NCBI RefSeq assembly: GCF_964188315.1
Contig: NC_135661.1
Coordinates: forward strand, 87,358,001 to 87,422,000
Reading direction: 5' to 3'
Length of the DNA stretch: 64,000 bases
From: Podarcis muralis
Taxonomy: Eukaryota
Shown: positions 22,864 through 63,971 of the stretch, one piece after another
Layout of the letters: each line of letters begins with the position of its first letter
Position numbering within the stretch: the first letter of the stretch is position 1
Made by a program: the position numbers and the translations under genes
The notes under the pieces: model-generated
What the model was told of the DNA's origin: nothing
The model's input: only the letters and a program-made list of their open reading frames with translations
Databases searched by the model: none

Positions 22864-27712
<4,849 letters not shown>

Positions 27713-41176: not shown

Positions 41177-42559
41177 ACCGTAAGTTAGGATTCGCTGACC
41201 CCACACCTCACGGTACTCCTCCGGCTGCCTGGGCCTCAGAGACGGCAGACCCCAAATGCGCTATCGCCTATTGCCCCCAACCCCTGGACAGACAGAGTTT
41301 GGCTCATCTGGGTCCTCGGTAGGGCCAAGGTGGGCAGCTGTGATGGAGGCACCTTCTCGTACGGTGGCCAAGTAGCAGCTGGAAGAGGAGAAGGTGGTGT
41401 TGGCACCCCTCTTTGGAGGGGGACCCCCCGGGGCTGTCTGCCAGCTGCTTCGTTCGACGGGGCACATGCGAGGGACAGGACGGAGGTCTCGTTTGCCTCG
41501 GCATCTGGATCAGACCCGCTTTCAGGGTCCAGGTGCCAATGTCCTAGGCTGGCCGGCTGGGTCCACCCTCCTTTCTACTCTTCCTGCCGGCCAAACCGGT
41601 TTGGCAGGATCCGGGAGCGCAGGCGGCGCCAGGGCCAGGCGAGTGCCCACCCCACACGGAAGAAGGCGCCTGGGCTAAGAACAGGAGCCTGCCGGATCAG
41701 GACAGTGCCCCCCCCCGCCCCAGGCTCCTGTTCTCACAGGGGCCCCAAGGAGGAGAGCCAATGCTGTATCCAAGCGCAATAACGCGTCAGGGGAAGCCCA
41801 GGGTCAAGAAATAAGCTGGGGAGGCAAAGCCGAGTCCTTCTGACTCTTCCTCCATGAATTTGCACATTCCTCTTTCAAAGCCATCAAAGTCCCCCCCACT
41901 CCGGCCTCTTGTGGGAGGGAGTTCCGCCGTTTAACTCTGCGCTGCGTAAAGAAGCCCGTCTTTCAATTTATCCGGAACTTTCCAATCTTACCCATAAGAT
42001 TGTTAACCCGGCTTGGCCAAGGCTGGTGTGAACTCTGGGGGAAAGGGGCCACGTCCAGCCTTGCGGGGGGGGGGTGCGTTGGCGCCAGGGGGTCGTGCAC
42101 AAAGTGTTTTGGACCGGAGGACCTCCTGCCCCCCGCCCCCCAGCTTCCCAATTTCCAGTAACGCCTCGGGTGTGTTTCCTGTTTTCGCTGGGATGCGCCG
42201 TCCCGGGCGGGGGGGAGGGGTGCTTTTCCCGGCTACTGTCTGATGCGCAAAGCAGGAAGACGCCCCCTCCAGAAAGAAACACATTGTCAGGAAGGACATG
42301 TTTTCCATTTCAGAGAGACAAAGCAGGGAATGTGGGGGGGGGGGGGTTGCAGGAGGGGACAGGGAGCCTGGCTTCAGCCCACAGCGCCGCCCTTTACGCA
42401 TGGCAGGGAGGGTGAGACTGGATGACCTCGGGGGTCCCCACCCCCTCGACGATCCTGTGATTTCCTGAGGAATCCCGTCCCTCGAGCCGCCTGAAGGGTG
42501 TTCATAGAATCGAGGAGTCCTGGGAAGGAGACCCCCGACGGTCATCTAGTCCCACCCTT

Positions 42560-42825
42560 GTTCCATGCTGGATCTAGGCTGGGGAAGGGGCTCGCCGCCC
42601 TCCCCGTCGAGGGCGGAGGCTGCCGCGAGGTGAGGGGGCAGGTACAGACCCCGCCCCCGCAAAGGGGCGTGTCCTCCTGGGCGGGGAGGCGTGGCCCCGA
42701 CGAGGCGCTCCCCTCCCTGCCTGCCTGTCTGCGCCCGGGCGCACAGCCTGGAAGGAGCGTCCGCTGCCGCCGCCGCCTCTCCGCCCGTCCGTCCGCCCGC
42801 GCGCTTTCTGCGAGGGGACCCCGCG
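42560..42825 (+). promoter_or_regulatory. CpG-rich promoter/5' UTR of the RhoUV-like gene
   Basis: High GC and CpG content with several GGGCGG/CCGCCC boxes directly upstream of the ATG at 42826. Confidence 0.65.
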
Positions 42826-45800
42826 ATGCCTCCGCAGGGCGAGTCTCTCCCGCCGGTGCCCCCGCGCCGCCCCCGCGAGCAGCGGCGCCTGCGGGGCCTC
42901 GAGTGCGTCCTGCTGGGCGACGGCGCCGTCGGGAAAACCAGCCTGGCGCTCAGCTACAGCACCAACGGCTTCCCCGCGCGATACGTCCCCACCGCCCTCG
43001 ACCGCTTCTCCGGTACGCGAGCGATGCGCGGGGGTGGGTTGGGATGGATGACCTTTGGGGGTGCCCTTCCCGCTCTGCGGGGACGAGCAAGAGCAGCGAC
43101 GACACTGCTTCGCGGGAGGTTTTGCTGTTTTATCCGCGGAAGTCATTCTTCAGCTGCCATTGCAGGGGGTTGGGATGGATGACCTTTGGGGGTCCCCTAC
43201 CGAACCGTGCAGGTCTGTGATTCCATACGGGGCGTGACTAGTGCTAAGCGCTATTCCTGCTCAACAGCCAGAGGGCATCGCCAACGTTGCAGGTTTACCT
43301 GCTCCCCAAAGAGGGGCCCTGCCCGGAGCACGGTTTGCAGGGGCTCCTGCAAATCCTTTTTCACGGGAGACCCCGGCAAGAGTCTCTTCCTGCTTGCCTC
43401 GTTCTGCCAGGAAAGATTTGCAGGCCTGGAGTCGACCGCATCCGAGTTTTCCTTTCCTAGTTCCTACCTGGAGAAAGACAAACTTTCATTTCACCAGAGT
43501 AGCCTCAGTCTGAGCGAAGGCTGCCGGAGGAGATCTATGGATGACGCGGGAAATGCAAACTAAACAAATGACGTCAGAATAATAATATTAAATAAGTATA
43601 AAAGTGGTTGGGGGTTGGCCTATATGTTCGCTGGGGTGCCTCCCAAACTATGACGCAGTGAATAACGAGGTTTTGCAATGGAGCACGGGTCGGGGATTGT
43701 TGAGTTGTGCTCCCTGCACTGCAGGAGTTGGGCTAGAATTTTATTATTATTATTATAAGTATTTTATTAGAATCATTTCATTCATAAAGAGATGGCGGGA
43801 GGGGGGAGAAAAGAGTTAGTGGGAATGATAAATAAGAAGAAAATACTGTCACCATACTTTAATATGCAGGTGTGTATATTCTTATTATCCTAATACACAA
43901 ATAATTGTCAGTAAGATAATATATTCTGCATAAACTCATTCCAGATAGAATTATATTTATCCAAAGACCCTCTGCTTCTCCAGCCATGTATTAAGGGGAA
44001 TTGTCTCTCTCTTCTTCCCATTCATCAATATCAGCCTCTGTTCCGGGTTCGAGTCCTGACGGAGTCACCAAAAACTAAATCAAGATCAGCCTCTAGGCTA
44101 GATGACCCCGGGGGGAGTCTTCAGAGGAGTCTGTTAAGAACCACAATTCTCCTTCTTCTGCTAGGGATCCTTGAGCTGCAGCCCTTGTGTTCCATGGGGT
44201 TGGGCTGGATGACCTTTGGAGGTCCCTTCCGCCTCCAGTGCCAGGGAGACTGAGCAGGAAGGCGCTGGGCTCTGACTTCCACAGCTGGGTGAGGGAAAGC
44301 CCCGATGCTGTGTCTTGATCTGGGGCGGCTGGGTCTGTCTGCCTCCCCAACTCTGACCCCCCATTTTTCTGTTTCGCCCCCCAGCTGTGGTGCAGGTCGA
44401 CGGAGACCCCATCCGGCTGCAGCTGTGCGACACCGCAGGGCAGGTAAGGAGGCCGGACGGGATGGGTTGGAGACTGACCTGGACTTGGCACGTTGACCTG
44501 GCCCTTCCTAACCGTCCCTGGGGCCTTCTTGAGGTCTAGCAACTTGTTTTTTCGAATTTATTCCCGAGGGTTGCAAGCCTGCCACTGAACCACTTTCCCC
44601 TCCGCAAATGGCGCAGGTGGCTTCCCCTCCCTGCAACCTGTAAGGGCAAAGGTGTCCCGGAGGCGAGAGGCGCAGGTGGGCTTCGCGGGGCCACATTTAT
44701 TTGGGGCCCCCTGCTCTGCGCCTCTTGAATCTGGCTTGTGGGGAAACTGAGGAGGGTCGGCTCTGGTGTCCGGGGTCCTAATACAGACACGTAGATATTG
44801 ATCCATTCTGGCTGTGGTTGCAATTTGCCTTTGAAATAGGCATATTGCTTAATTTTTACTTCTACAAAAAATAACAAACCTTTGTCAACACAAGAAATAC
44901 AAGACAAACTAGAAGACACCCAAATGTCCTGGTTAACACATCACCAATTACATGCCTTCTTAAACAATCCAGCAGTAAAATCAGCAGCAACTAGGCCCCT
45001 GACAACCTTCGAAAACCTCCTTCAAAGGGACACGGTAAAGGGATGGTATCCGCCGTATACAAAATACTACTACAAAATCCCACAAACTCCCTAGACGCAA
45101 TCAAAAAACAATGGGAGGATGACATAGGCTATGAGATTAACCCCACTCAATGGACCAAAATGTGGTCTAGGTAAAGGTAAAGGGACCCCTGACCATTAGG
45201 TCCAGTCGTGGCCGACTCAGGGGTTGCGGCGCTCATCTTGCTTTATTGGCCGAGGGAGCCGGCATACAGCTTCCGGGTCATGTGGCTAGCATGACTAATC
45301 CGCTTCTGGTGAACCAGAGCAGTGCACGGAAACGCCGTTTACCTTTCCGCCGGAGCGGTACCTATTTATCTACTTGCACTTTGACCTGCTTTCGAAGTGC
45401 TAGGTTGGCAGGAACAGGGACAGAGCAATGGGAGCTCACCCCATTGCGGGGATTCGAACACTGACCTTCTTTTCGGCAAGTCCTAGGCTCTGTGGTTTAA
45501 CCCACAGCGCCACCCGCATCCCAAAATGTGGTCTAAACCCCCCTTTAAATCCATATCAACAAAAAGAGAAGAACTCACTCTGAAACTCACCTACAGGTGG
45601 TACTTAACACCAAGAAAACTAGGGCTAATACGCCCAGGAACCTCACCAAAATGCTGGAGAGGGTGCACCTCCACAGGCACATACCTCCACATGTGGTGGG
45701 AGTGCCCCAAAATCCAACTATTCTGGACAACAGCCATACGAGAAATAAGTAAAATAACCAAACAAGTATTAGAAACCACCCCAGAATTGGCCCTACTAAA

Positions 45801-47315
45801 CATCTTCCAAGACAACAATGCCCACTTACACCACAAAGAACTCATAACCCACCTACTTTCAGCAGCCAGAAACACCATAACCAGACACTGGAGAGACCTG
45901 TCAGGAGTAAGCATGGACCAATAGTACTAAATAGTATGGGAAACAGTCTTACTAGAAAAATTAACCAATAAACTGAAACTGACACAGGGACAAATAGAAG
46001 AAGACGCCTTCACCCCGGTATAGCTCCCCTTTATCACACACACAGCCCACAAGACAATGACAAAAATCCACCAACGGCATACAAATCAATATGGCTAAGT
46101 TAAAGGGACCCCTGACCATTAGGTCCAGTCGTGGCCGACTCATCTCGCTTTATTGGCCGAGGGAGCCGGCATACAGCATCCGGGTCATGTGGCCAGCATG
46201 ACTAAGCCGCTTCGGGCGAACTGATGGGGACTTGGGTGGTGCTGTGGGTTAAACCACAGAGCCTAGGGCTTGCCGATCAGAAGGTCGGCGGTTCAAATCC
46301 CCGCGACAGGGTGAACTCCCTTTGCTTGGTCCCTGCTCCTGCCAACCAACAGTTTGAAAGCACGTCAAAGTGCAAGTAGATAAATAGTTACCACTCTGGC
46401 GGGAAGGTAAACGGCGTTTCCATGCGCTGCTCTGGTTCGCCAGAAGTGGCTTGGTCATGCCGGCTCCCTCGGCCAATAAAGCGAGATGAGCGCCGCAACC
46501 CCAGAGTCGTCCGCGACCGGACCTAATGGTCAGGGGTCCCTTTACCTTTACCTATGCTGCCCTTCCTCCCTAGAAGAGGGTTGGCCTAGATGCCCGCCAG
46601 GGCACCCCCTCCTAGCCCTGTGGTTAGAATCAACTAGGGTCATCGTTTTCTGATTCACCGGAGCACTTTAAACAGAGGTTGCCTGGCCACCTGCCACGGA
46701 TTCTCGGGTGGCAATTCCTGCCGCGTTGGAGGGGGTTGGTCTAGATGGCCCCTGGAGGACCCCTTCCAGCTCTGCGGTTCCCTGGTTCGGTGCCTTCAGG
46801 GACCCCAGCTTGCAGGGCGCCCCTCTCTCCCTCTTCACGGCCTCCCCTCTTTGCCCCCCCAGGACGAGTTTGACAGCCTGCGGCGCCTCTGCTACCCGAA
46901 GGCGGACGTGGTCCTGCTCTGCTTCAGCGTCGTGTCTCCGACCTCGTTCCAGAACATCTCTGAGAAGTGGCTCCCCGAATTGCGCCGCCACTGCCCCGCC
47001 ACGCCCGTCCTGCTGGTGGGCACCCAGTCGGACCTGCGCCAGGACGTCAAGGTCCTCATCGCCCTGTCCCGGCGCCGGGAGAAGCCTGTGTCCCCCTCGG
47101 CCGCCCGCACCCTCTCCGCCAAAGCCGGCTTGCTGGGCTATGTGGAGTGCTCGGCTCTCACCCAGCACAACCTAAAGGAGGTCTTTGACACGGCCATCAC
47201 CGCAGGGCTGCGCTGCGCCCGTGGCCCCCCGCCCAAGCCGCAGCGTCGCAGCACCGCCAGCCGCATCCGGACCCTCTCCAAGGCTTGGTGGAGGAAGCAC
47301 GTCTGCCTGTCATAG
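42826..47315 (+). CDS. RhoU/RhoV (Wrch1/Chp)-family atypical Rho GTPase, 3 exons: 42826-43012, 44385-44443, 46863-47315 (699 nt, 232 aa)
   Basis: The exons splice in frame (187+59+453). The protein has an N-terminal PPVPPRR, P-loop GDGAVGKT, DTAGQ, TQSD, ECSALTQ, and ends LSKAWWRKHVCLS*. The exon structure is that of RHOU/RHOV. No symbol is given because orthology to RHOU or RHOV is doubtful (see findings). Confidence 0.95.
44760..46100 (+). mobile_element. L1-clade LINE ORF2 3' remnant in RhoUV-like intron 2
   Basis: ORF 45526..45924 carries the L1 C-terminal Cys/His motif CWRGC....TYLHMWWECPKI..FW. Confidence 0.85.
45170..45520 (-). mobile_element. Sauria SINE inserted in an L1 ORF2 remnant
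   Basis: 15-bp TSD CCAAAATGTGGTCTA at 45155-45169 and 45521-45535. Confidence 0.92.
46101..46552. mobile_element. Inverted pair: 3' part of a Sauria SINE (-, ~46101-46220) abutting a near-full Sauria SINE (+, ~46225-46552)
   Basis: The tail sequence GGGACCCCTGACCATTAGGTCC occurs on opposite strands at the two ends. Confidence 0.8.
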
Positions 47316-50735: not shown

Positions 50736-51112
50736 NNNNNNNNNNNNNNNNNNNNNNNNNNNNNNNNNNNNNNNNNNNNNNNNNNNNNNNNNNNNNNNNN
50801 NNNNNNNNNNNNNNNNNNNNNNNNNNNNNNNNNNNNNNNNNNNNNNNNNNNNNNNNNNNNNNNNNNNNNNNNNNNNNNNNNNNNNNNNNNNNNNNNNNNN
50901 NNNNNNNNNNNNNNNNNNNNNNNNNNNNNNNNNNNNNNNNNNNNNNNNNNNNNNNNNNNNNNNNNNNNNNNNNNNNNNNNNNNNNNNNNNNNNNNNNNNN
51001 NNNNNNNNNNNNNNNNNNNNNNNNNNNNNNNNNNNNNNNNNNNNNNNNNNNNNNNNNNNNNNNNNNNNNNNNNNNNNNNNNNNNNNNNNNNNNNNNNNNN
51101 NNNNNNNNNNNN
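50736..51112. other. Assembly gap (377 N)
   Basis: Run of N characters. Confidence 1.
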
Positions 51113-56304: not shown

Positions 56305-57249
56305 ATAATAATAATAATAATAAATTATTTATACCCCGCCCTCCCTGGCCAAAACCGGGCTCAGACATCAACATCAAATATATAACATATTACCATAAAA
56401 TCAAGCAATCAATTTGAACACAGGCCCAGACGGGGGGTGGGGGGGTTATATGGGCCACTTGTCCCAGGCCTCCGATTCCAAATGGGGCCTCGGTCAGAAT
56501 ATTTATCTATATTTTCCATTTTGTCTTTATATGCAGATACGGTTCAAGCCTTGAAATAAAATTATTCGTCAGCATAACTTTTGTGAAAATTATTTACATA
56601 ATTATTTATAAGACTTCAGTTACCCCCAGGGTAAAAAAAAAAAAGGGGGGGGGCACATTATCCACCTGCCCCGGGCCTCTGCCTGCCCCTGCACATCATA
56701 AACTCAAAAGTGCCGTCATGTGCATGCATGGAAGCGGCAAAGCGCGACCCACGCATGCAGAGTCGCGTCTTATGTCCGCTTTAGGATGCGAACGGGGCTC
56801 CAGAACGGATCCCGTTCGCATCCAGAGGTACCACTGTATTCTTTTATTTGGACTTTGTTACTTGAACCAACCTGAAGCTGCACTCATTTTATTTTATAGG
56901 TTTTGTTTTCCATCCGTAACACACACACATTTCTGTTTTACAATTTAAAATATTCATTTAAACAACCTTAAAATCTCAATTGCTTCCCTTCTTTTCTTTC
57001 TATGGTTCATTTTGCATAACATAAATCCCCTCATATTATATATAAACCAAACCATTCCGTATTCCATTATTACACCCATCACAACTTATTCACACTGCTG
57101 AATTTATCTTAATGCTGCCGACGTTTTCAAATGTACACAAACACCCCCCATATAGTCAATAAACGTTTTCCAATCTTCTTTAAACATATTTTCTTGTTTT
57201 CCACATTTTAAACTTTGTCCATCGTCATCACTGCTCCGCCCGCTTTTAT

Positions 57250-57673
57250 AACACATTGCAAAATAAAAGCCGAAAACGGAAGGAGCCCGCGCCAGCCATT
57301 CATTCATCCATCCGCCCAGGGCTGCACTTCGTTCGCCGCGTCGCCAGGGGGCGCTCTCGCTCCAGCCGCGCGCGGGAAAAGGGGAGAGGAGGGGCGTGGC
57401 TCGGACGGACGGGGCTCGCTTGCGCCGTCGACGCCCGCGATGGCCGCTTGACGCTATAAAGCTCCGCCGGAGGAGGAAGACGCCATAAGAGCGCGACAAC
57501 CCGGAAGCGGCTGGGCGCCGCCATATTGCGCGAAGCGCTTTCCAGGCTCCGGGCAGGAAGAAGGAGAGGAAGAAGAAGAAGAAGAAGAGGAGGAAGAAGA
57601 AGGCGGTGGAAGAGGAGAGGAAGGAGGAGGAGAGGAGGGGCCGCCTCCCCCTCAGCTCCCCGCCGGCCCAGCC
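57250..57673 (+). promoter_or_regulatory. RAB4B CpG-island promoter and 5' UTR
   Basis: CpG-rich; TATAAA at 57455, ETS-like CCGGAAGCGG at 57501, YY1-like GCCGCCATATTG at 57517, purine tract at 57555-57640. Confidence 0.7.

Positions 57674-63971
<6,298 letters not shown>

What the first reader, a model, noticed from the sequence alone, without database searches (positions are those of the whole stretch)
42826..47315. Intact third RhoU/RhoV-family GTPase gene between MIA and RAB4B, where mammals have none
Seen: a complete, in-frame 3-exon, 232-aa Rho gene with a CpG promoter, lying directly upstream of RAB4B in the same orientation. Established: the human 19q13.2 order is ITPKC-ACTMAP-SNRPA-MIA-RAB4B-EGLN2, with MIA and RAB4B adjacent. 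Human RHOU sits upstream of RAB4A on 1q42, in the region carrying ITPKB, COQ8A and EGLN1; RHOV is on 15q15 near ITPKA. Inference: this gene is the ohnolog on the ITPKC/RAB4B paralogon, a third vertebrate RhoUV member retained in squamates and lost in mammals. Pipelines would probably label it 'RhoU-like', and I know of no functional study.
Basis: partly seen in the sequence, partly recalled or inferred. Interest (0 to 1): 0.88.

Follow-up and report, generated by a model that had tools for sequence, protein, structure and literature searches.

The report
Lizard ortholog of fish rhoub GTPase
The intact Rho GTPase gene between MIA and RAB4B in the wall lizard is the ortholog of the fish gene rhoub, an old third RhoU/RhoV-type paralog kept by sharks, fishes, amphibians, turtles and lizards but not found in mammals. 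It is already annotated as 'RhoU-like', although reviews treat rhoub as a zebrafish-only duplicate.

Summary
Exons 42826-43012, 44385-44443 and 46863-47315 (+) splice with GT-AG into a 232-aa Rho GTPase. The product is identical to the RefSeq protein 'RhoU-like' of Podarcis muralis. Exon 1 sits in a CpG island, and the gene order is SNRPA-MIA-gene-RAB4B, all on the + strand.

In a 91-protein ML tree the gene falls in a third gnathostome clade (support 100/99), separate from RhoU/rhoua (100/99) and RhoV (100/100). That clade holds the shark, coelacanth, bichir, gar and teleost genes already named rhoub. It also holds amphibian, turtle, tuatara and squamate 'RhoU-like' genes. So this is the tetrapod ortholog of a named gene, not a squamate speciality.

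A turtle, a frog and two other lizards carry it in the same SNRPA-MIA-x(-RAB4B) slot. Several squamates have separate RhoU and RhoV genes as well. The gene is under purifying selection (15 synonymous and 0 nonsynonymous differences between two Podarcis species; dN/dS 0.10 against Zootoca).

No mammal, bird or crocodilian member appeared in the searches. Accessible reviews call rhoub a zebrafish duplication, so its antiquity is a modest correction. Not tested: P. muralis's own RHOU locus, transcripts in the lizard, and the 2R paralogon.

The parts
42501..43300 (+). CpG island over the promoter and exon 1 of the Rho gene
   Evidence: GC 0.63-0.77 and CpG o/e 0.86-1.04 in 400-bp windows. The transcription start was not mapped.
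42826..43012 (+). Exon 1: ATG, N-terminal extension with the PPVPPRRP (PxxP) motif, P-loop GDGAVGKT and switch I
   Evidence: Pfam Ras hit. Donor GT at 43013.
44385..44443 (+). Exon 2, 59 nt, ending in the DTAGQ (G3) codons
   Evidence: AG acceptor and GT donor. A 59-nt middle exon is conserved in all 8 orthologs examined.
46863..47315 (+). Exon 3: switch II, Rho insert, G4 TQSD, G5 CSAL, basic-Trp tail and C-terminal Cys (…WWRKHVCLS), stop codon
48081..48086 (+). First AATAAA after the stop codon, a possible polyadenylation signal
   Evidence: This is a motif match only.
24351..24503 (+). SNRPA exon (RRM1), upstream neighbour two genes away
   Evidence: Matches U1A at 94 bits against 70 bits for U2B''.
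29703..33846 (+). MIA, the immediate upstream neighbour (signal-peptide exon near 29703-29837; last exons end at about 33846)
   Evidence: Called 133-aa SH3_2 product (mapped to the window). KLADKKLCADAEC motif. Weak PDB match to MIA 1I1J.
57201..57800 (+). CpG island and first coding exon of RAB4B (ATG at 57674)
62084..63971 (+). RAB4B exons 2-4 (62084-62164, 63122-63236, 63909-63971)
   Evidence: The spliced translation reads through cleanly. The best PDB match is Rab-4B 2O52, at 69.7 bits against 65.3 for Rab4A.

Best explanation
This is the functional Podarcis muralis ortholog of rhoub (RhoUb). RhoUb is the third member of the vertebrate RhoU/RhoV subfamily of atypical Rho GTPases. It arose from a duplication of the RhoU-type gene before sharks and bony vertebrates diverged. 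It persists in cartilaginous and ray-finned fishes, coelacanth, amphibians, turtles, tuatara and squamates. In tetrapods it occupies the slot SNRPA-MIA-RHOUB-RAB4B. It was not found in mammals, birds or crocodilians.

Inferred mechanism, by homology with RhoU/Wrch-1: a small GTPase switch with all five G boxes intact. It would be tethered reversibly to membranes by palmitoylation of the single Cys three residues from the C-terminus, helped by the Trp-Trp-basic tail. It would be recruited to SH3 adaptors through the conserved N-terminal PPVPP motif, and it would signal through switch-I effectors of the PAK/Par6 type.

Shown here: gene structure, identity with the annotation, clade membership, synteny, purifying selection and motif conservation. 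Inferred only: palmitoylation, SH3 and effector binding, nucleotide cycling, expression in the lizard, and a 2R whole-genome-duplication origin.
For: Gene model and identity with the RefSeq protein.

ML tree of 91 RhoU/V proteins: the RhoUb clade has support 100/99 and contains 4 sharks/rays, coelacanth, bichir, sturgeon, gar, 7 teleosts, 6 amphibians, 4 turtles, tuatara and 10 squamates including the window protein. RhoU/rhoua has 100/99 and RhoV 100/100. U+B together have 95/80.

AU test: holding all tetrapod 'RhoU-like' genes together with true RhoU is rejected (p = 0.021, delta lnL 39.5).

Same gene order in other tetrapods: turtle ACTMAP-SNRPA-MIA-x-RAB4B, frog SNRPA-MIA-x, Zootoca MIA-x-RAB4B, Hemicordylus SNRPA-MIA-x.

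Separate RhoU and/or RhoV genes in species that also have this gene: Lerista, Varanus, Protobothrops, Hemicordylus, Pelodiscus, and Podarcis raffonei (RhoV on another chromosome).

Selection: 15 synonymous and 0 nonsynonymous differences between P. muralis and P. lilfordi, against 5-7% intron divergence. dN/dS is 0.096 against Zootoca and 0.16 against Hemicordylus.

Motifs across the 36 clade members: G1 in 35/36, Thr35 context in 36/36, G3 in 35/36, G4 in 36/36, G5 in 36/36, PPVPP in 33/36, WW-basic-Cys tail in 35/36.

Clade-diagnostic tails: WWKKYVCxx for B, against WWKKYCCFV for U and WKKFFCFV for V.

RhoU biology used for the mechanism (PxxP binding to Grb2/Nck SH3 domains, CFV palmitoylation, PAK effectors): review PMC6959303.
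Against: The narrower AU test, which holds only the sauropsid members together with RhoU, is not rejected at 0.05 (p = 0.067). Orthology of the sauropsid genes to fish rhoub therefore leans partly on their shared position with the frog gene.

In ray-finned fishes the upstream neighbour is a reticulon gene, and no rab4b exon lies within 10 kb. The RAB4B linkage is thus shown only for tetrapods.

I obtained no transcript evidence for any squamate. The one candidate contig turned out to be genomic.

Sauropsid members evolve much faster than RhoU: lizard-turtle identity is 72% against 93%. They also have an altered switch I, so effector use may differ from RhoU.

The lacertid tail has His where RhoU has the Src-target Tyr.

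Absence from mammals and archosaurs rests on missing hits in annotated proteins, not on inspection of their MIA-RAB4B intervals.
Confidence: 0.85

Rival explanations
1. It is a lineage-specific (tetrapod or sauropsid) duplicate or translocated copy of RHOU that resembles fish rhoub only by chance or by long-branch effects.
For: The AU test that holds sauropsid copies together with RhoU gives p = 0.067, which is not a formal rejection. The sauropsid stem branches are long, 0.29 and 0.21. Lacertids have PPVPPRR as in RhoU rather than the PPVPPH of other clade members.
Against: Support for the joint clade is 100/99. The tetrapod-wide version of this hypothesis is rejected (p = 0.021). The frog gene in the same SNRPA-MIA slot groups with coelacanth, shark and fish rhoub. 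The single-Cys YVC tail is shared with fish rhoub and not with RhoU. True RhoU exists separately in other squamates and turtles, and is more than 90% identical among them.
Confidence: 0.05
2. It is an intact-looking but decaying relic: an unexpressed gene or pseudogene in the making, on its way to the loss seen in mammals.
For: Protein evolution is fast in sauropsids compared with RhoU. No squamate transcript was recovered here. The conserved tail Tyr is replaced by His or Cys in several lizards.
Against: There are 15 synonymous and 0 nonsynonymous differences between two Podarcis species. If substitutions fell in proportion to site numbers, the chance of this is about 1e-9. dN/dS is 0.10-0.18 within lizards. 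The reading frame, splice sites and all G boxes are intact in every squamate sampled. The promoter keeps its CpG island.
Confidence: 0.03
3. The U/B split is ancient but is not a product of the two vertebrate whole-genome duplications. It could be a segmental or tandem duplication before the gnathostome radiation, in which case the '2R ohnolog on the ITPKC/RAB4B paralogon' label is wrong even though the orthology to rhoub holds.
For: No paralogon analysis was possible with these tools. The cyclostome sequences join RhoU only weakly (87/26). The fish loci do not show rab4b nearby.
Against: The topology ((U,B),V), with invertebrate single-copy genes outside, fits two rounds of duplication plus one loss. 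From general knowledge of the human map (not tested here), RHOU-RAB4A-ITPKB-COQ8A-EGLN1 on 1q42 mirror COQ8B-ITPKC-SNRPA-MIA-RAB4B-EGLN2 on 19q13.2, and RHOV lies near ITPKA on 15q15.
Confidence: 0.12

Closest known systems
rhoub (ras homolog family member Ub) of zebrafish and other fishes
   Same: Same clade (100/99) and same three-exon structure with a 59-nt middle exon. Both have a short N-terminal extension with one PPVPP motif and a single-Cys WW-basic tail. Identity to gar, coelacanth and shark rhoub is 62-67%.
   Different: Lizard and turtle copies have diverged faster. Their switch I is altered (FPARYVPTALDRF against YPTKYVPTAFDDF), and lacertids have His instead of Tyr before the tail Cys. 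In gar, shad and seahorse the upstream neighbour is a reticulon gene rather than MIA. The reviews I could read describe rhoub as a zebrafish duplication (PMC10903452, PMC9099977).
RHOU / Wrch-1 (human; structure 2Q3H)
   Same: It is the sister paralog (U+B 95/80). The G domain aligns without gaps at E 1e-82. Shared features are the central PPVPPRR SH3-binding motif, TQSD in G4, and a non-CAAX tail of the kind reported to be palmitoylated in RhoU.
   Different: It is not in the RhoU clade. The tail has one Cys (VCLS) rather than CCFV. The N-terminal extension is about 25 residues instead of about 46, and it lacks the first and third proline-rich motifs. It lies next to RAB4B, not RAB4A. RhoU is far more conserved (93% against 72% lizard-turtle identity).
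RHOV / Chp
   Same: Same subfamily. Sauropsid RhoUb shares the switch-I residues Ala30, Arg31 and Leu37 (Cdc42 numbering) with tetrapod RhoV. Both have Cys at position -3.
   Different: RhoV forms a separate 100/100 clade outside U+B. RhoV lacks the PPVPP motif and has the tail WKKFFCFV. Podarcis raffonei has its own RhoV on another chromosome.

Membership tests
RhoU/RhoV (RhoUV) subfamily of Rho GTPases | Rho-type G domain with G1-G5 boxes and a Rho insert | tested here: met
   Pfam Ras on both large exons. Gap-free alignment to RhoU 2Q3H over residues 21-199, E 1e-82. GDGAVGKT, Thr35, DTAGQ, TQSD and CSAL are all present.
RhoU/RhoV (RhoUV) subfamily of Rho GTPases | Groups with RhoU and RhoV to the exclusion of invertebrate single-copy RhoU-like genes, and scores higher to RhoU than to Cdc42 or Rac | tested here: met
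   The vertebrate U+B+V clade has support 100/98 against 8 invertebrate RhoU-like proteins. RhoU scores 280 bits against about 222 for Cdc42 and about 211 for Rac1.
RhoU/RhoV (RhoUV) subfamily of Rho GTPases | Non-CAAX C-terminus that is palmitoylated on a Cys near the end, with a Trp/basic stretch | tested here: inconclusive
   The sequence fits (…AWWRKHVCLS, Cys at -3). Palmitoylation itself cannot be tested with these tools.
RhoUb / rhoub orthogroup | Monophyly with the named rhoub genes of sharks, coelacanth, gar and teleosts | tested here: met
   Clade support 100/99. The tetrapod-plus-RhoU constraint is rejected at p = 0.021. The sauropsid-only constraint gives p = 0.067.
RhoUb / rhoub orthogroup | Conserved genomic position | tested here: inconclusive
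   The SNRPA-MIA-x(-RAB4B) order is shared by frog, turtle and three lizards (plus the window). Gar, shad and seahorse instead have a reticulon gene upstream and no rab4b within 10 kb. No DNA was available for the shark, and the coelacanth protein was not on record.
RHOU proper (Wrch-1) | Membership of the RhoU/rhoua clade, and a CCFV/CCLA double-Cys tail | tested here: not met
   It lies outside the 100/99 RhoU clade. The tail is VCLS with one Cys.
RHOV (Chp) | Membership of the RhoV clade, the tail WKKFFCFV, and no PxxP motif | tested here: not met
   It lies outside the 100/100 RhoV clade. It has PPVPPRRP and a WWRKHVCLS tail.
2R ohnolog of RHOU | The duplication is older than crown gnathostomes and younger than the split from invertebrates | tested here: met
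   Sharks and rays lie inside the B clade. Invertebrate genes lie outside U+B+V.
2R ohnolog of RHOU | The paralogs lie on chromosome regions descended from one ancestral linkage group | not testable with these tools
   Only 10-kb flanks could be fetched. The match between 1q42, 19q13.2 and 15q15 is recalled from the human map and was not computed here.

The most novel reading that the evidence does not exclude
After mammals and archosaurs lost RhoUb, the copy retained in lepidosaurs and turtles changed its job. Its switch-I effector loop converged on the RhoV pattern (Ala30/Arg31/Leu37; squamates and tuatara also have Phe28). Its rate of protein change is several-fold that of RhoU, while it stays under purifying selection. 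This would mean a re-targeted effector repertoire rather than simple redundancy with RhoU.
Probability: 0.2. Interest if true: 0.45.

Novelty: new member of a known kind. Interest (0 to 1): 0.3.

Why it matters
Textbook accounts and reviews count two RhoU/V genes in vertebrates. They explain zebrafish rhoub as a fish duplication (PMC10903452, PMC9099977, PMC6959303). The tree and synteny here show that rhoub is an ancestral gnathostome gene, with living orthologs in amphibians, turtles, tuatara and squamates. The mammalian pair is therefore a reduced set.

This matters for interpreting zebrafish and Xenopus RhoU experiments, because a second RhoU-type gene may compensate. It also matters for naming: 'RhoU-like' genes, Bombina 'RhoU' and Zootoca 'RhoU' are all RhoUb. 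And it fills the RAB4B-side gap in the RHOU-RAB4A / RAB4B paralogy.

The correction is modest. The gene is already annotated, the kind of protein is well understood, and ohnolog loss in mammals is common.

Tried and rejected
(1) Transcript evidence. The 187-aa Logan protein P0018 looked like a spliced product on a 1-kb contig. Its first 38 residues are intron read-through before exon 3, and it is 97% identical to a turtle gene. It is therefore genomic and says nothing about expression.

(2) P. muralis RHOU and RHOV. The exact-match look-ups found RhoV only for P. raffonei. The 46-member reptile RhoU cluster listed no lacertid among the 15 members shown. The scan's own notes hold nothing on RAB4A or RHOU elsewhere in this genome.

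(3) Fish synteny. A tblastn of the lizard RAB4B N-terminal 91 residues against the gar, shad and turtle loci gave nothing within 10 kb. In the turtle, only exon 1 and intron 1 of RAB4B fall inside the fetched flank.

(5) Boureux et al. 2007 (Rho family evolution) and Dickover et al. 2014 (zebrafish rhoua) are not in the held library. An earlier description of tetrapod RhoUb cannot be excluded.

(6) All unnamed hits were checked for a hidden bird, crocodilian or mammal member. Every RhoUb-type hit matched a squamate, turtle, amphibian, fish or ray.

(7) The representative search gave unnamed, partly fused proteins. I used it only to find a RhoV query.

(8) dN/dS at the turtle, frog and fish depths is unreliable, because GC3 is 0.81-0.96 and dS is saturated. 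Only the lizard comparisons are quoted.
Full report
WHAT IS THERE. The window is a stretch of Podarcis muralis chromosome record OZ076960.1, assembly GCA_964188315.1. Joining 42826-43012, 44385-44443 and 46863-47315 on the + strand gives a 699-nt reading frame. Every exon end has a GT donor, and every acceptor has a pyrimidine tract and AG. The 232-aa product is identical to P0001, the RefSeq protein XP_028597808.2 'rho-related GTP-binding protein RhoU-like [Podarcis muralis]'. The same sequence is deposited for P. lilfordi.

An exhaustive search for GT-AG exon triplets that translate exactly to the annotated protein found one solution here. It also found one solution in each of seven orthologous loci: P. 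lilfordi, Zootoca, Hemicordylus, a turtle, a frog, gar and shad. All have a 59-nt middle exon. Exon 1 lies in a CpG island at about 42501-43300. The first AATAAA follows the stop codon by 766 nt.

NEIGHBOURS. All neighbours are on the + strand.
- An SNRPA exon lies at 24351-24503 (U1A 94 bits against 70 for U2B'').
- MIA runs from about 29.7 to 33.8 kb (133-aa SH3_2 product; motif and weak PDB match).
- The Rho gene lies at 42.8-47.3 kb.
- RAB4B follows, with its own CpG island at 57201-57800, its ATG at 57674 and exons at 62084-62164, 63122-63236 and 63909-63971. These splice cleanly and match Rab-4B best.
- Nothing is called in the 10-kb spacer, which holds a 377-N gap.

WHAT IT IS. Pfam finds the Ras family on both large exons. 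The closest solved structure is human RhoU (2Q3H), aligned without gaps over residues 21-199 at E 1e-82, ahead of Cdc42 and Rac.

The best database relatives outside squamates are 'RhoU-like' proteins of tuatara, turtles, frogs, newts and caecilians. Next come proteins that NCBI already names 'ras homolog family member Ub' in coelacanth, bichir, gar, teleosts and several sharks. Searches seeded with a true RhoU and with a RhoV supplied the other two groups, cyclostome sequences and invertebrate outgroups.

An IQ-TREE analysis of 91 proteins (LG+C20, 243 columns) gives three gnathostome clades:
- RhoV, support 100/100.
- RhoU/rhoua, support 100/99.
- A third clade, support 100/99. It contains shark and ray rhoub, coelacanth, bichir, sturgeon, gar and teleost rhoub, six amphibians, four turtles, tuatara and ten squamates. 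The window protein lies inside the squamates (99/98).
RhoU and the third clade are sisters (95/80), RhoV is outside them, and invertebrate RhoU-like genes are outside all three.

Forcing all tetrapod 'RhoU-like' genes to join true RhoU costs 39.5 log-likelihood units and is rejected (AU p = 0.021). Forcing only the sauropsid ones to join costs 23.3 units and is borderline (p = 0.067).

A simple tail signature agrees with the tree. RhoU ends WWKKYCCFV or CCLA. RhoV ends WKKFFCFV. The third clade ends WWKKYVCxx with a single Cys. Lacertids end WWRKH(V/A/I)CLS.

SYNTENY. The turtle Carettochelys has ACTMAP(-)-SNRPA-MIA-x-RAB4B. The frog Spea has SNRPA-MIA-x. Zootoca has MIA-x-RAB4B. Hemicordylus has SNRPA-MIA-x. 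The tetrapod genes are therefore positional orthologs. Because the frog gene groups with fish, coelacanth and shark rhoub, the tetrapod-wide AU test is the relevant one.

In gar, shad and seahorse the upstream neighbour is a reticulon gene, and no rab4b exon lies within 10 kb. Linkage to RAB4B is thus shown for tetrapods only.

IS IT AN EXTRA GENE? Several species carry this gene together with separate RhoU and/or RhoV genes:
- Lerista: P0005, P0441, P0457.
- Varanus: P0011, P0290, P0377.
- Protobothrops: P0036, P0434, P0453.
- Hemicordylus: P0003, P0123.
- The turtle Pelodiscus: P0021, P0435.
- Podarcis raffonei: P0461, with RhoV P0450 on a different chromosome.
I could not retrieve P. muralis's own RHOU with the tools allowed. 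The 'translocated true RHOU' alternative is excluded by phylogeny, not by inspecting that genome.

IS IT FUNCTIONAL? P. muralis and P. lilfordi differ at 15 coding positions, all synonymous, while their introns differ by 5-7%. dN/dS is 0.096 against Zootoca and 0.16-0.18 against Hemicordylus. Across the 36 members of the clade the G boxes, the PPVPP motif and the WW-basic-Cys tail are each kept in 33 to 36 members. No lizard transcript was available, and the one candidate contig proved to be genomic. Full-length proteins on contigs of about 1-2.5 kb that best match caecilian, skate and catfish members indicate transcription in those groups only.

HOW IT PROBABLY WORKS. By homology with RhoU/Wrch-1 (review PMC6959303), I infer the following.
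- It is a GTPase switch. Its central N-terminal PxxP motif (PPVPPRRP here, PPVPPH in most clade members) binds SH3 adaptors such as Grb2 and Nck.
- Its C-terminal Cys is reversibly palmitoylated rather than prenylated.
- Its switch I engages PAK/Par6-type effectors.

Differences from RhoU:
- The N-terminal extension is about half as long and lacks the first and third proline-rich motifs.
- There is one tail Cys rather than two.
- The Tyr that Src phosphorylates in RhoU is His in lacertids and Cys in several other lizards.
- Sauropsid members carry FPARYVPTALDRF in switch I, where fish, amphibian and coelacanth members have YPTKYVPTAFDDF and RhoU has YPTEYIPTAFDNF. Ala30, Arg31 and Leu37 (Cdc42 numbering) match tetrapod RhoV. 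This accounts for the 'RhoU/RhoV mosaic' impression in the scan's note s1-193706.
- Sauropsid RhoUb also evolves several-fold faster than RhoU (72% against 93% lizard-turtle identity).

LOSSES. No mammal, bird or crocodilian sequence falls in the clade among the named hits. None does among the unnamed ones either, each of which best matches a squamate, turtle, amphibian, fish or ray. For mammals this agrees with the standard count of 20 human Rho genes (PMC6959303). It also agrees with the known adjacency of human MIA and RAB4B, which is general knowledge and was not tested here. For archosaurs, absence could still be an assembly or annotation artefact. The gene has GC3 of about 0.9 and lies in a region that is hard to assemble in birds.

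COMPARISON WITH WHAT IS KNOWN. The gene is annotated, and its fish orthologs are named. [quoted passage not shown] They list only RhoU and RhoV for vertebrates. I found no paper on tetrapod RhoUb. The main evolutionary study of the family could not be read.

It rests on recalled map positions and was not computed here.

VERDICT. This is a real, intact, constrained gene. It is the lizard ortholog of rhoub, a third ancestral RhoU/V paralog retained widely outside mammals. It is not a squamate novelty. Interest is modest.

Noticed in passing
window 45168-46554 (intron 2 of the Rho gene): Two tRNA-derived SINE-like copies lie in inverted orientation (45168-45522 against 46227-46554; arms 81-95% complementary), plus a partial direct copy at 46097-46221. 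They flank a LINE-like ORF fragment of 132 aa at 45526-45924 with a Cys/His-rich C-terminal segment. Together they fill about 1.4 kb of the 2.4-kb intron.
   Followed up: partly
window 43036-43070, 43167-43201, 44197-44231, 46578-46612, 46733-46767: Five same-strand copies of a motif of about 35 nt (GGGTTGG..TGGATGACCTTTGG..CCCTTCC) lie in introns 1 and 2. This is probably the conserved end of a dispersed reptile repeat. I did not classify it.
   Followed up: no
window 42901-43012 (switch I, exon 1); alignment: Sauropsid RhoUb has RhoV-like switch-I residues (Ala30, Arg31, Leu37), and squamates and tuatara have Phe28 where turtles keep Tyr. Fish, amphibian and coelacanth RhoUb keep the RhoU-like pattern. 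This looks like convergence on RhoV after the amniote split.
   Followed up: partly
P0055 (Bombina), P0459 (Zootoca), P0049 (Acipenser), P0025/P0033 (Pseudonaja, Naja): Public names are inconsistent. Bombina, Zootoca and sterlet proteins named 'RhoU' are RhoUb-type by tree, cluster membership or tail. Two snake entries carry the UniRef name 'Small nuclear ribonucleoprotein polypeptide A', which may reflect confusion with the SNRPA gene that lies upstream of this gene in the lizards examined.
   Followed up: partly
L003 (gar), L004 (Alosa), L011 (Hippocampus): In three ray-finned fishes a reticulon-family gene lies directly upstream of rhoub on the same strand, where tetrapods have MIA. I did not determine which reticulon it is.
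   Followed up: no
P0462 against P0001: The earlier RefSeq version of the P. muralis protein (XP_028597808.1) differs from the current one, and from this window, at three residues (E116D, R153H, P208L). These are either polymorphisms or corrections between assemblies.
   Followed up: no
window 50736-51112: A run of 377 N lies in the spacer between the Rho gene and RAB4B. I left it as it is.
   Followed up: no
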